Origin: Auanema rhodensis
Taxonomy: Eukaryota > Animalia > Nematoda
Direction: 5' to 3'
Assembly: GCA_964057225.1 (NCBI GenBank)
Contig: OZ059897.1
Coordinates: 15,500,001-15,564,000, forward strand
DNA length: 64,000 nt
In this document: positions 33,210 through 35,214 of the stretch, piece after piece
Numbering within the stretch: position 1 is the first letter of the stretch
Layout of the letters: the number at the start of each line of letters is the position of its first letter
Translations under genes and position numbers: made by a program
The notes under the pieces: generated by a model
What the model was told of the DNA's origin: nothing
Seen by the model: the letters and a program-made list of their open reading frames with translations, nothing else
Databases searched by the model: none

Positions 33210-35214
33210 TCAGTATACAAAGACAAAACAAATTGATAAAATAAATGAAACTACAGAAAACTTGAGATCGAATGAACTACTTGTAGTTACGGAGTTTAAG
33301 GATTGTGTTGTTGCATATGTTGTGGGAGTTGGGTCAGTTGAGACAGTCGTATTAGATGGATCAACCCAATCAGCAATAAAAAGATTCAAATCATATTGAG
33401 AAGATGCATTCCTAGAAGATCCCCATACAAGCTTTGTTCCAGCATAATTCATCATAGCGAATGAATTAAATTGCCATTTATCACCATAAGTAACCTGAAA
33501 AGTATTTTTAAAAAATAAAAATAATTGACAAGCATACTCTTTCTAAGTTAGTACCATCATCATTAATTATATAAAGAGAAAATGCTCCAAAACCGTTTTG
33601 GGCATCATCATGATTTGAACTGAAAATTTAAAAAATCAACTTCTATTTGAAATTTTGAAAAATTTACCTAAAAATAACTCTTTTATTATCAATATAATAA
33701 GGAGCCCAATTAGCTTGTGTTAAATTAGTAATTTGCCTCATATTTTGACCATCAATATCAATAACAAATAATTCCATAGCAATTGGTTCTACTAAGTCGT
33801 ATGATAAAAGTGTCTAAACAATAATTATAAAAAAATGTTCTTCAATAAAATGATATAACCTTGTATTTCTTTATATCTTCATCAGTTTTTGGTCGGCTTG
33901 CACGGAATATAAGGCGTTTTCCATCAGGTGAAAAGAAACTTCCTCCGTCATATCCCAAAGTATTAGTTAACTAGAATATATTATTTAGTTAAAAACATTA
34001 TAATATCTTGTATTATACTTGTTTAAGATTGGTTCCATCACTATTCATTATCCATAATTCTAAATCTCCACTTCGAATAGATGTAAAAGCAATCTTTGTG
34101 CCATCTGGAGAAAGAACTCCTTCAGCATCATATCCTGGAGAATTTGTTAATCTCTGGACAATATTACCATATTTATCAACCTTTAAATGAATAATATAAT
34201 AATAAAAAGGGAAAGAAAACAAAAACCTTGAATATATCATAATCAGGAACAATATCCCAAGTATATGACGTATTACAGAGCTGTTTAAGTACAGGATCTT
34301 GAATTGTAGTTGGGTTAGCGCACTTCTTTGGTGGACAAGTCTTTGATATATCTGGATACCTATCAGCAGTTATCTAAATGTTTAGATAATTTAAATATAT
34401 TGAAAGAAAAGCTGACATTCCAAAAGTTTCCAGCATATAGACGATGATTATTATCAGCTTCTTTAAAGAAAAAGGAACAAGTTGTACCACCAAGTCCTGT
34501 ACTAATTCTGCGTAAAGTTTGTTGTCTTGGATCAATGTTCAAATCCAGTTCATAAATCTAAAGTAATATTTTGTGTTTTAACATAGGAATATGTGCTTAC
34601 TTGGTCACAATCAGTACCGTAACCAGTTGCTTGCAAAGTTAGTTTTGAATCATCAAAACTGGAATAAAAAGATTAAATCTAACGGAAGTAAATTTGAAAT
34701 TTTGTAAAACGATTAATAGAAAAGTTCAAAAGTACCTAAAATATCCTTCAGCATTTTCACCTTGAAATGTTAGTTGTTTAACATTTTTAAAATGTGTCTC
34801 TCCTTGAAAATGGATAACATTATCATATGGCTCTGTTTCTAAATCTTGCCATCTAGTCTATAACATCAATCAATAAAATTATTGAAAAATACGGAAAATG
34901 GAAATAAAATATTAAGAAATACACACAGGAATGGTTGATGTTGATATTCTATTTGTCTTCAATTCTTCTGCTTTAGTATCCCAAAATGAGCCTAAACTCT
35001 GTTTCTGCAATAAGTACAATTATTAATATGTGGAAATATATTATAAATTTTAAAAAGATTCAAATAATATTCATAATTACTATTATGAATAAGAATATTC
35101 ATTTCTTTCTTCTTTTTTTCTTACCCATTTGTCGTAGAATCCATCATCTGCAGATGGAATTGCAGCATATGCTAAAGAGCAAACAGCAACAAAGAATATC
35201 AGACGACGATCCAT
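33210..35214 (-). CDS. TolB-like/PD40 beta-propeller with signal peptide, Ser/Thr stalk and GPI-like tail (about 11 exons)
   Basis: Blades KQLTFQGENAEGYFSFD, RLTNSPGYDAEGVLSPDGTKIAFTSIRSGDLELWIMNSDG, QLTNTLGYDGGSFFSPDGKRLIFRASRP, QITNLTQANWAPY; ends NLFIADW, then a T-rich linker and FSVVSFILSICFVFVY*. Confidence 0.88.

What the first reader, a model, noticed from the sequence alone, without database searches (positions are those of the whole stretch)
33210..35214. Bacterial-type TolB/PD40 propeller rebuilt as an intron-rich, probably GPI-anchored animal surface protein
Seen: the spliced protein has the motif series QLTFxGENAExYFSFD, CDQIY, STGxGxTTCSFF, CPP, YDIF, PGYDAExxxSPDG, GYDGGxFFSPDG, RASRP, ANWAP, NLFIADW. 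The gene has about 10 host-style introns, a signal exon, a Thr-rich stalk, a hydrophobic terminal tail, and a TATA box plus ACTGATAA (35375) upstream. Recalled: this motif order matches an uncharacterised bacterial PD40 family rather than animal WD40 proteins, and bacterial versions end at ...IADW. Inference: an old horizontal acquisition that gained a GPI tail and a gut promoter, possibly binding bacterial envelope components in the lumen. The introns and nematode flanks argue against contamination. Automated 'TolB' annotations may already exist in other nematodes, but I know of no function.
Basis: partly seen in the sequence, partly recalled or inferred. Interest (0 to 1): 0.85.

Follow-up and report, generated by a model that had tools for sequence, protein, structure and literature searches.

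The report
Nematode tag-10 propeller gene, bacterial origin
This is a real, intron-rich nematode gene for a surface-anchored beta-propeller protein of bacterial ancestry, but it is the ordinary counterpart of the C. elegans gene tag-10 (C31C9.1), whose bacterial origin and membrane-raft location are already published and whose function is still unknown.

Summary
On the minus strand at 35214-33210 lies an 11-exon, 10-intron gene for a 473-aa protein.

It is the orthologue of C. elegans tag-10 (C31C9.1), at 78% identity. It is 87% identical to the Auanema sp. JU1783 gene, which has the same ten intron positions and sits among the same neighbouring genes.

The family occurs across rhabditid nematodes of clades III, IV and V, often already auto-named "TolB". 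The next relatives are Bacteroidota PD40 proteins at 45-54% identity, which exist either stand-alone or fused to an M28 peptidase and a PDZ domain.

In the tree, all eukaryote-type sequences form one clade (support 99/99) set among bacterial sequences. They also share a two-cysteine insert that all 49 bacterial sequences lack.

A bacterial origin for C31C9.1, and its description as a gut apical raft protein, are already in print. "TolB" is a misnomer: there is no TolB N-terminal domain, and the TIGR02800 score is 89 against a cut-off of 343.

The proposed function is untested, and the novelty was overrated.

The parts
33210..35214 (-). Whole coding region of the tag-10 orthologue (ATG at 35214, stop at 33212-33210): 11 exons, 10 introns, 473 aa
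   Evidence: Spliced model with an open frame and GT..AG at every intron. Exon structure is the same as the annotated Auanema orthologue.
35125..35214 (-). Exon 1: signal peptide (MDRR + hydrophobic core + AYA) and the start of the N-terminal extension
   Evidence: judged a signal peptide by inspection. This exon is 90 nt in Auanema too.
34927..35004 (-). Exon 2: N-terminal extension carrying the conserved TNR[IV] motif
   Evidence: The motif is also seen in the linker of two-propeller proteins of strongylids.
34736..34857 (-). Exon 3: RWQDLETEPYDN..QLTFQGENAEGYF, start of the propeller
34601..34658 (-). Exon 4 (..TGYGTDCDQ)
34417..34557 (-). Exon 5 (IYELDL..STGLGGTTCSFF..AGNFWN)
   Evidence: alignment A5
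34227..34373 (-). Exon 6. It includes the insert with two extra cysteines at about 34257-34337 (CPPKKC...LKQLCNTSYTW), which marks all eukaryote-type members.
   Evidence: The insert is 24-30 residues with 3 Cys in 23 of 23 eukaryote-type sequences, against 13-16 residues with 1 Cys in 49 of 49 bacterial sequences.
34019..34180 (-). Exon 7: PD40 repeat (PGYDAEGVLSPDG..)
   Evidence: Pfam PD40 E 2.8e-12; 67-82% identical to Bacteroidota loci
33860..33970 (-). Exon 8: PD40 repeat (GYDGGSFFSPDG..RASRP)
   Evidence: Pfam PD40 E 9e-9
33668..33813 (-). Exon 9 (..ANWAP..)
33538..33619 (-). Exon 10
33360..33494 (-). Exon 11, first part: last propeller blade, ending ..NLFIADWVD
   Evidence: It is 79% identical to the Ancylostoma ceylanicum terminal exon.
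33261..33359 (-). Exon 11, middle: Ser/Thr/Pro-rich stalk (mucin-like, probably O-glycosylated)
   Evidence: The 51-residue tail, which comprises this stalk and the hydrophobic end, is 45% S/T/P. Comparable stalks occur in Caenorhabditis and Auanema orthologues.
33213..33260 (-). Exon 11, end: 16-residue hydrophobic C-terminus with no cytoplasmic tail, preceded by small residues (TTSSS). This is a GPI-attachment-signal-like peptide.
   Evidence: Kyte-Doolittle mean 2.1 over the last 17 residues. The same feature is present in 20 of 27 complete or partial relatives listed. C. elegans isoforms a and b have it, c and d lack it.
35375..35382 (+). Extended GATA site ACTGATAA (antisense to the gene, 168 nt upstream of the ATG). 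A second TGATAA lies at 35391-35396 on the minus strand.
   Evidence: TTATCAGTT is the longest identical block in the 260-nt promoter alignment with Auanema.
35217..35223 (-). TTTGCAG acceptor-like site 3 nt before the ATG, a possible trans-splice site
   Evidence: Its role is inferred from nematode biology only; there is no RNA evidence.

Best explanation
The locus is the orthologue, in a rhabditid nematode close to Auanema, of C. elegans tag-10 (C31C9.1). It encodes a secreted-pathway protein with these parts in order: a signal peptide, a short extension with a conserved TNR motif, a PD40 beta-propeller of about six blades, a Ser/Thr/Pro-rich stalk, and a C-terminal GPI-attachment-type peptide. 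[quoted passage not shown] A soluble form is also possible, as in C. elegans isoforms c and d. The family descends from one ancient transfer of a Bacteroidota-type PD40 propeller gene into an ancestor of at least the Rhabditida (clades III-V). After the transfer it gained introns, a two-cysteine insert, the stalk and the anchor signal, and it duplicated into two types that are often arranged in tandem or fused. These steps are shown: the gene model, orthology, distribution, the single eukaryote-type clade among bacterial sequences, and strong purifying selection. These steps are inferred from sequence plus cited literature: GPI anchoring and gut expression. This step is inferred only, at roughly 0.3 probability: the protein is a non-catalytic binding platform that captures peptides or unfolded protein, or a partner hydrolase, at the membrane surface. 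That inference rests on bacterial relatives being fused to an M28 aminopeptidase plus a PDZ domain, and on the nearest folds being substrate-gating propellers of S9 peptidases and the ligand-binding propeller of TolB.
For: Gene model and motifs. PD40 repeats. Identity to Auanema 87% and to Caenorhabditis TAG-10 78-81%. Same 10 intron positions and phases as Auanema, and at least one shared with C. elegans. Collinear neighbours (tRNA-Ser, methyltransferase, ASMase-like phosphoesterase, histidine phosphatase and upstream genes). dN/dS 0.056, GC3 18%, intron GC 19%. Distribution: the top ~35 hits of a eukaryote-type query comprise 27 named nematode proteins (clades III, IV, V) and 7 sequences of unnamed origin (P0281, P0288, P0291, P0300, P0302, P0305, and P0311 ranked 37th), with the first bacterial hits (P0307, P0309, P0310 at 357-364 bits) already interleaved from rank 33 and only bacteria after that, no non-nematode eukaryote being named. 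Tree: the eukaryote-type clade has support 99/99, the core nematode clade 100/99, with a distant bacterial clade as outgroup. Shared two-cysteine insert in 23/23 eukaryote-type against 0/49 bacterial sequences. Hydrophobic C-termini across orthologues and alternative C. elegans ends. Conserved GATA block. Literature on C31C9.1 as an HGT region and a gut apical raft protein. Bacterial architectures (stand-alone, or M28 plus PDZ fusion). Structure model of the Auanema orthologue: pLDDT 86, propeller at residues about 68-425. Nearest folds are putative TolB 2ojh, TolB, S9 peptidase propellers and oligogalacturonate lyase.
Against: No RNA data exist for the window's splice junctions. No GPI predictor or experiment was available, and the raft and gut statements come second-hand through a citing paper because Rao et al. 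2011 could not be read. The full spliced protein could not be submitted to any database search, so distribution was judged with a related query (L092 C-terminal propeller) and only its best 120 hits. Three basal eukaryote-type sequences (P0302, P0305, P0311) come from unidentified organisms, so the recipient lineage may be wider than Rhabditida. The root rests on one distant bacterial clade. tag-10 depends on muscle transcription factors in embryos, which does not fit a purely intestinal role. Bacterial gene neighbourhoods are not conserved, and no ligand or partner is known, so the functional part is weak. High conservation of many polar residues between bacteria and nematodes would also fit an enzyme.
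Confidence: 0.8

Rival explanations
1. The family is an ancient eukaryotic or metazoan gene inherited vertically and lost almost everywhere except nematodes. On this view the similarity to Bacteroidota reflects slow evolution, or a transfer from eukaryote to bacteria.
For: The eukaryote-type clade sits on a long stem rather than deep inside one bacterial genus. Three basal members are of unknown origin.
Against: No non-nematode eukaryote appears above more than 85 bacterial clusters in a search of 5.8 billion clusters that includes UniRef, nr and EukProt. The bacterial family is very large: at least 8000 clusters in each of two searches. It has two architectures and a more distant bacterial clade as outgroup. 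Published analysis reached the same bacteria-to-Rhabditida conclusion.
Confidence: 0.05
2. The region is bacterial contamination or an assembly artefact rather than a nematode gene.
For: There is high similarity to bacterial proteins.
Against: The gene has ten spliceosomal introns with nematode-type acceptors and host-like composition, with GC3 18%. Intron positions and gene order are conserved with Auanema. Orthologues exist in about 30 nematode species.
Confidence: 0.01
3. One reading: the propeller is a gut-lumen receptor for bacterial envelope components, working like TolB binding Pal or a colicin TolB-box peptide. It would serve to sense or hold food bacteria or pathogens.
For: The fold is closest to TolB-type PD40 propellers. 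The protein is probably located at the apical gut surface. The ancestor was bacterial and presumably periplasmic or surface-exposed.
Against: The protein is not a TolB orthologue. The bacterial relatives are not in tol-pal neighbourhoods. The family is kept in tissue-dwelling filariae that do not feed on bacteria. No binding data exist.
Confidence: 0.12
4. The propeller is itself an enzyme (a hydrolase or lyase on a propeller scaffold, as in oligogalacturonate lyase or propeller lactonases), tethered to the membrane.
For: About 40 positions are invariant between nematodes and bacteria, many of them D, E, R, Y, W or S. Purifying selection is very strong. Fold matches include oligogalacturonate lyase 3pe7 and lactonase 8djf.
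Against: Most invariant residues lie in the canonical PD40 repeat motifs and may be structural. Family matches to enzyme models are weak and below their cut-offs. The bacterial fusion supplies its own catalytic M28 domain.
Confidence: 0.15
5. The protein acts mainly at the muscle or body-wall surface (adhesion or matrix attachment) rather than in the gut.
For: [quoted passage not shown]
Against: GATA sites are conserved upstream, and no CArG box or CAGCTG-type E-box lies within 800 nt upstream in three species. The cited description is of a gut apical raft protein.
Confidence: 0.1

Closest known systems
C. elegans TAG-10 (C31C9.1, chromosome II; isoforms of 439-473 aa) and its orthologues in Caenorhabditis and Auanema
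   Same: 78-87% identity over the propeller. The domain order is the same: signal, TNR..RWQDLET extension, propeller with the two-cysteine insert, S/T/P stalk, hydrophobic end. One intron position is exactly shared with C. elegans and all ten with Auanema, and gene order matches Auanema.
   Different: The window gene has 11 exons against 6 in C. elegans. Its base composition is much more AT-rich (GC3 18% against 56%). Its stalk is shorter than in C. elegans isoform a. Whether the window species makes a tail-less isoform is unknown.
Bacteroidota stand-alone PD40 proteins auto-named 'TolB family protein' or 'PD40 domain-containing protein' (for example L058:2593-3627, 345 aa)
   Same: They align end to end with residues about 70-424 at 46-54% identity. 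They share the motif series and end two residues after ..IADW.
   Different: They have no introns, no two-cysteine insert, no N-terminal extension and no stalk or hydrophobic tail. They carry a bacterial signal peptide.
Bacteroidota fusion proteins: PD40 propeller + Peptidase_M28 + PDZ (for example L001:2581-4812, 744 aa, Flavobacterium branchiophilum)
   Same: The N-terminal propeller is of the same family, about 49% identical.
   Different: They carry a catalytic M28 aminopeptidase and a PDZ domain after ..IADW. The nematode proteins have neither.
TolB of the Tol-Pal system
   Same: It has a PD40-repeat beta-propeller fold, is among the best structural matches, and its propeller binds protein or peptide ligands.
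   Different: The nematode protein has no TolB N-terminal domain. It scores 89 bits against TIGR02800, whose cut-off is 343. Identity to TolB is only 13-20%. There is no Tol-Pal genomic context in the bacterial relatives.
Propeller domains of S9 peptidases (acylaminoacyl peptidase, DPP-IV family) and of tricorn protease
   Same: There is fold-level similarity, weak DPPIV_N matches, and precomputed Tricorn_N matches.
   Different: No alpha/beta-hydrolase catalytic domain is present, and sequence identity is 10-15%.

Membership tests
Nematode TAG-10 (C31C9.1) orthologous group | High identity to TAG-10 over the whole propeller and placement inside the TAG-10 clade | tested here: met
   78-81% identity to Caenorhabditis and 87% to Auanema. 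The clade of 9 type-B sequences has support 100/99.
Nematode TAG-10 (C31C9.1) orthologous group | Domain order: signal, TNR..RWQDLET extension, propeller with two-cysteine insert, S/T/P stalk, hydrophobic C-terminus | tested here: met
Nematode TAG-10 (C31C9.1) orthologous group | Conserved gene structure and gene order with an annotated orthologue | tested here: met
   All 10 intron positions and phases are shared with Auanema. Neighbours are collinear on both sides. Gene order with C. elegans is not conserved.
TolB (Tol-Pal system) | N-terminal TolB_N domain preceding the propeller | tested here: not met
   A Pfam scan of the Auanema, C. elegans, Dirofilaria and H. polygyrus proteins, and of the window exons, shows PD40 only.
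TolB (Tol-Pal system) | Score above the curated cut-off of the equivalog model TIGR02800 | tested here: not met
   88.9 bits (Auanema), 84.2 (C. elegans) and 123.8 (bacterial L058), against a cut-off of 343.15
TolB (Tol-Pal system) | Gene lies in a tol-pal operon (bacterial relatives) | tested here: not met
   Ten flanking genes from seven Bacteroidota loci encode MarR, NUDIX, aldo-keto reductase, hydrolase, phosphodiesterase, oxidoreductase, HmuY and SurA-like proteins, plus two with no Pfam match. None is a tol or pal gene.
PD40 (WD40-like) beta-propeller superfamily | PD40 repeats above the Pfam cut-off, folding into a closed propeller | tested here: met
   PD40 at 46.7 and 35.5 bits on window exons 7 and 8, cut-off 20.9. 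The AlphaFold2 model of the 87%-identical orthologue has pLDDT above 90 for most of residues 68-425, with about 24-26 strands.
GPI-anchored proteins | N-terminal signal peptide, plus a C-terminal hydrophobic stretch of about 15-20 residues with no cytoplasmic tail, preceded by a polar spacer and small residues | tested here: met
   By inspection and hydropathy. The feature is conserved in most relatives. No dedicated predictor was available.
GPI-anchored proteins | Experimental lipid anchoring (PI-PLC release, raft fractionation) | not testable with these tools
   Only second-hand evidence exists: C31C9.1 is cited as a membrane-raft protein from Rao et al. 2011, and the original paper is not held.
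S9 / DPP-IV peptidases | C-terminal alpha/beta-hydrolase catalytic domain | tested here: not met
   No Peptidase_S9 match was found. The protein ends in the stalk and tail right after the propeller.
Horizontally acquired gene (bacteria to animal) | Recipient sequences form one clade nested among donor-domain sequences, there are no homologues in related eukaryotes, and the gene is integrated in host DNA | tested here: met
   Clade support 99/99 with a bacterial outgroup. Among named hits, only nematodes rank above the bacteria, whose first three clusters already interleave with the lowest nematode hits; several other high-ranking sequences are of unidentified origin. Introns, conserved gene order and host-like composition are shown. 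Caveats: only the best 120 hits were seen, three basal sequences are of unknown origin, and the full window protein itself could not be searched.

The most novel reading that the evidence does not exclude
The nematode propeller may have kept the working partnership of its bacterial ancestor. As a raft-anchored, lumen-facing capture module it would hand peptides, or bacterial envelope fragments, to membrane peptidases of the gut brush border. That would make a bacterial periplasmic accessory domain an essential and nematode-specific part of digestion. Because it is conserved in filariae, hookworms and trichostrongyles, it could then be a hidden gut antigen or drug target. A related unexplored point is that the ancestral nematode gene may have encoded two propellers in tandem, and the TAG-10 N-terminal extension may be the remnant of the inter-propeller linker.
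Probability: 0.12. Interest if true: 0.65.

Novelty: already known. Interest (0 to 1): 0.3.

Why it matters
As a discovery it adds little. The gene family is annotated across nematodes. Its C. elegans member has a gene name and a reported raft and gut location, and has been published as a bacterial acquisition.

It still matters as an open functional problem. This is a bacterial-derived, surface-exposed protein under very strong purifying selection. It is present in free-living and major parasitic nematodes and absent, as far as seen here, from their hosts, and it has no known function.

The points added here give concrete handles for experiments in C. elegans:
- the 'TolB' label is wrong;
- bacterial relatives are fused to an M28 peptidase and a PDZ domain;
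- a diagnostic two-cysteine insert marks the eukaryote-type members;
- the family has two paralogue types, with tandem or fused arrangements;
- an extended GATA site is conserved upstream;
- C. elegans has both anchored and tail-less isoforms.

Tried and rejected
1. An exhaustive HMMER search with exon 7 alone was useless. Ranking by summed repeat scores put giant multi-PD40 proteins on top.
2. A word-index search with a bacterial stand-alone homologue was swamped: 8000 bacterial candidates and no eukaryote among the best 120.
3. I tried to build a full-length query by aligning the window's exons to bacterial scaffold sequences (A1-A4). MAFFT stacked the homologous blades on one another, so these alignments were not used for any search.
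4. The full spliced protein has no reference and was therefore never submitted to a database search, a structure prediction or a contig look-up. The 87%-identical Auanema protein P0296 served as proxy for Pfam, NCBIfam, PDB and structure work.
5. The Ancylostoma ceylanicum locus (L081) holds only the last exon within 10 kb. Upstream exons were not reached.
6. The metagenome scan with a nematode-specific exon alignment returned mostly bacterial loci. The exception was L092, which turned out to be the key query.
7. I considered whether the conserved [RK]TNR motif is a furin-type cleavage site and rejected it. The P4 position is K in the window and D in Auanema, so only TNR[IV] is conserved.
8. 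Looking for run and sample accessions in the literature, to identify the organisms behind L082, L083, L095, L096, L097 and L092, found nothing. No SL1 leader is present on the transcript-like contigs.
9. Bacterial gene neighbourhoods gave no conserved partner.
10. Crisp et al. 2015 supplements, the rml-3 HGT preprint, and GPI-proteome and hookworm secretome papers do not mention the gene.
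Full report
**1. The observation**

Reading the minus strand of 32800-35600 and splicing at GT..AG sites gives a single open frame of 1422 nt in 11 exons. Two boundaries needed correction while building the model.
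- The exons are 35214-35125, 35004-34927, 34857-34736, 34658-34601, 34557-34417, 34373-34227, 34180-34019, 33970-33860, 33813-33668, 33619-33538 and 33494-33210.
- The ten introns measure 120, 69, 77, 43, 43, 46, 48, 46, 48 and 43 nt. Most have TTTCAG-like acceptors.
- Pfam finds PD40 repeats in exons 7 and 8.
- The product starts with a typical signal peptide. After ..NLFIADWVD it ends with a 51-residue tail that is 45% Ser/Thr/Pro, and the last 16-17 residues are strongly hydrophobic with nothing after them.
- Only one copy is present in the window.

**2. Bacterial relatives**

Exon 7 alone finds 461 related loci in one-genome-per-species bacterial contigs. The best 80 are nearly all Bacteroidota (Flavobacterium, Saprospiraceae, Lewinellaceae and others), at 67-82% identity. 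The whole spliced protein aligns to these loci over residues about 70-424 at 46-52% identity, E about 1e-104.

The bacterial genes come in two architectures.
- The other is a protein of about 744 aa in which the same propeller is followed by a Peptidase_M28 domain and a PDZ domain.

Flanking genes are not conserved and are not tol-pal genes.

**3. Finding the eukaryotic relatives**

The spliced protein has no reference, so it could not be searched directly. Three first attempts failed; they are listed under tried and rejected (and alignments A1-A4).

Exon 11 found a 73-aa fragment annotated in Ancylostoma ceylanicum, also present in A. duodenale. It is 80% identical and has the same kind of hydrophobic end. 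Exon 11 also found an ENA contig, L082, that carries two intron-containing copies in tandem next to an intron-split ribosomal protein L3 gene.

A metagenome scan with a nematode-specific exon-5 alignment returned L092. This is a 3.6-kb contig with an intron-less 721-aa two-propeller gene beside an intron-less inositol polyphosphate kinase gene, which is a eukaryotic marker. Its C-terminal propeller scores 393 bits against the window protein but at most 321 bits against Bacteroidota.

Used as a query, that propeller gave a clean result. Most of the top ~35 hits are named nematode proteins, and several others are sequences of unidentified origin:
- clade III: Setaria, Loa, Dirofilaria, Thelazia, Gongylonema, Parascaris;
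- clade IV: Steinernema, Strongyloides papillosus, Halicephalobus, Panagrolaimus;
- clade V: Heligmosomoides, Teladorsagia, Ostertagia, Ancylostoma, Cylicostephanus, Pristionchus, Auanema, and eight Caenorhabditis species.

Only bacteria follow, at 364 bits or less, their first three clusters already interleaving with the lowest nematode hits. Many of the nematode proteins are already named 'TolB', 'Biopolymer transporter Tol', 'WD40-like' or 'DPPIV_N domain-containing'. The C. brenneri and C. briggsae proteins are named TAG-10. The C. elegans protein is the product of C31C9.1 on chromosome II.

**4. Orthology and the host genome**

The window protein is 87% identical to the Auanema sp. JU1783 protein and 78-81% identical to Caenorhabditis TAG-10.

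Exact spliced mapping of the annotated proteins onto their loci shows the following.
- The Auanema gene has 11 exons of nearly the same lengths, and all ten intron positions and phases coincide with the window gene.
- C. elegans tag-10 has five introns. One is at exactly the same position (after ..DYDIFK) and two are within a few residues.
- The two paralogue types on L082 also share several of these positions, so some introns predate the duplication.

The window is collinear with the Auanema contig on both sides of the gene. Shared neighbours are the adjacent tRNA-Ser, a Methyltransf_21/22 gene, an ASMase-like metallophosphoesterase, small genes, a histidine phosphatase and two upstream genes.

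dN/dS against Auanema is 0.056 with saturated dS. Coding GC3 is 18% and intron GC is 19%, matching the AT-rich host. The window therefore comes from a rhabditid nematode related to Auanema, and the gene is a long-standing, constrained resident. Contamination is excluded.

**5. Origin**

I built a maximum-likelihood tree from 76 propeller sequences: 26 eukaryote-type, 45 Bacteroidota-type, P0311, and four members of a more distant bacterial clade from metagenomes as outgroup.
- All eukaryote-type sequences fall in one clade: support 99/99 including P0311, 98/80 for the 26, and 100/99 for the core 24.
- That clade sits among the bacterial sequences.
- The window and Auanema are sisters (100/96) inside the TAG-10 clade (100/99).

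An independent character agrees. Between the conserved CP and Y.W positions, all 23 eukaryote-type sequences carry a 24-30-residue segment with three cysteines, while all 49 bacterial sequences have 13-16 residues with one cysteine.

Together with the very large bacterial family, and the absence of named non-nematode eukaryotes above the bacterial hits, this supports one old bacteria-to-nematode transfer followed by duplication.

Caveats:
- only the best 120 hits were visible;
- the root depends on one outgroup clade;
- three basal sequences (P0302, P0305, P0311) come from unidentified organisms and are transcript-like contigs without an SL1 leader.

**6. What is already published**

- A 2026 BMC Genomics paper, and its 2022-24 preprint, list the CDS of C. 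elegans C31C9.1 as a horizontal transfer region linking Rhabditida and bacteria. [quoted passage not shown] That paper is not held here.
- No functional study was found.

**7. Topology and regulation**

The stalk plus hydrophobic C-terminus without a cytoplasmic tail is conserved in Auanema, most Caenorhabditis, hookworms, Teladorsagia, Strongyloides, Steinernema hermaphroditum and Pristionchus, and in the two basal transcripts. Filarial, Thelazia and Parascaris type-A proteins end in charged tails instead. C. elegans isoforms a and b have the hydrophobic end and isoforms c and d replace it with ..PGKWWWSRGG, so both anchored and soluble forms probably exist.

Upstream of the window gene two GATA sites lie 182 and 168 nt before the ATG.
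- Auanema has sites at -191 and -142, and C. elegans at -296 and -274.
- The block TTATCAGTT, which is ACTGATAA on the other strand, is the longest identical stretch in the promoter alignment with Auanema.
- A single TGATAA is not remarkable in this AT-rich DNA, at 1.8 sites per kb. The conserved position gives moderate support for intestinal GATA-factor control.
- A TTTGCAG acceptor 3 nt before the ATG suggests trans-splicing. This is inference only.

**8. Fold and family membership**

The AlphaFold2 model of the Auanema orthologue (alignment A6, 72 sequences) has mean pLDDT 86. It shows a confident propeller over residues about 68-425 with roughly 24-26 strands, about six blades. The N-terminal extension and stalk are of low confidence, and there is a terminal helix.

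No close solved structure exists. Sequence matches to the PDB are at the level of single repeats. The best fold matches are a putative TolB from Agrobacterium (2ojh), TolB, S9 peptidase propellers and oligogalacturonate lyase, at 10-20% identity and TM about 0.35-0.46 over the full query.

The 'TolB' name fails its membership test. There is no TolB_N domain. TIGR02800 scores 84-89 bits for the nematode proteins and 124 for the bacterial relative, against a cut-off of 343. There is no tol-pal context.

**9. Mechanism**

- What is shown: a constrained, secreted-pathway PD40 propeller of bacterial descent.
- What is inferred with good support: display on the outer membrane leaflet through a GPI anchor on a glycosylated stalk, at least partly in the intestine.
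- What is only a best guess, at about 0.3: it is a non-catalytic capture or docking module for peptides, unfolded protein or a partner hydrolase. This rests on the M28 peptidase-PDZ fusions of its bacterial relatives and on the role of related propellers in S9 peptidases, tricorn and TolB.

Rival functions remain open: a receptor for bacterial envelope components, an enzyme, or a muscle-surface role.

**10. Verdict**

But this is the ordinary orthologue of a named C. elegans gene whose bacterial origin and raft location are already in the literature. Novelty is low, and the residual interest lies in the unknown function of a conserved, nematode-restricted surface protein.

Noticed in passing
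window 10448-12266 (minus strand): This is a GC-rich island (42% against about 27% around it). It holds long ORFs encoding a Cys/Thr/Pro/Gln-rich repeat protein with many C.P.C.P.C units and poly-Thr runs. It looks like a secreted structural protein and was not identified.
   Followed up: no
window 32971-33054 (-) and 10107-10178 (+): tRNA-Ser(AGA) lies about 155 nt downstream of the gene's stop and is conserved at the same place next to the Auanema orthologue. tRNA-Cys(GCA) sits beside the GC-rich island.
   Followed up: partly
window 17190-32889 and 46070-49557 vs L094: Gene order is collinear with Auanema sp. JU1783 contig CALQYR020007493.1. Shared genes are a Methyltransf_21/22 gene, an ASMase-like metallophosphoesterase, a histidine phosphatase and two upstream genes. 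Between the tag-10 orthologue and the upstream syntenic block, about 10.9 kb (35.2-46.1 kb) in the window has no matching segment, against about 6.4 kb in L094.
   Followed up: partly
L082 184-2456 (ENA ERZ22382522 contig); also P0276, P0286, P0297, P0282: In strongylid-like genomes a type-A propeller is followed, in a splice-compatible frame, by a linker containing the TNR motif and then by a type-B (TAG-10-like) propeller. The TAG-10 N-terminal extension may therefore be a remnant of an inter-propeller linker. Filarial proteins (Setaria, Loa) also carry a second, divergent propeller.
   Followed up: partly
L092 29-3519 (JGI Ga0164288_1018352): An intron-less 721-aa two-propeller gene lies next to an intron-less IPK kinase gene. 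Its C-terminal propeller is 82% identical to Halicephalobus sp. NKZ332 and 87% identical to an ENA fragment, so this is probably a panagrolaimomorph nematode with intron-poor genes. The N-terminal propeller is highly divergent, about 23% identical to family members.
   Followed up: partly
L093 (C. elegans chr II 13628662-13640918); P0292, P0394-P0396: The four C. elegans isoforms differ only in stalk length and in having either a hydrophobic GPI-type end (a, b) or the short end ..PGKWWWSRGG (c, d).
   Followed up: partly
window, whole: The extended GATA motif ACTGATAA occurs 11 times in the window against 4.5 expected, and none of 100 shuffles reached 11. Whether this reflects several gut-expressed genes was not examined.
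   Followed up: no
L061, L037: Two metagenome bins titled 'uncultured Bifidobacterium sp.' and 'Variovorax paradoxus' carry propeller genes that nest tightly within Bacteroidota sequences. Binning contamination or mislabelling is the likely cause.
   Followed up: no
L095, L096, L097 (P0302, P0305, P0311): Three transcript-like contigs from unidentified organisms encode the earliest-branching eukaryote-type members. They have the two-cysteine insert but a more bacterial-like NAEAYF motif. Two of them have hydrophobic C-termini.
   Followed up: partly
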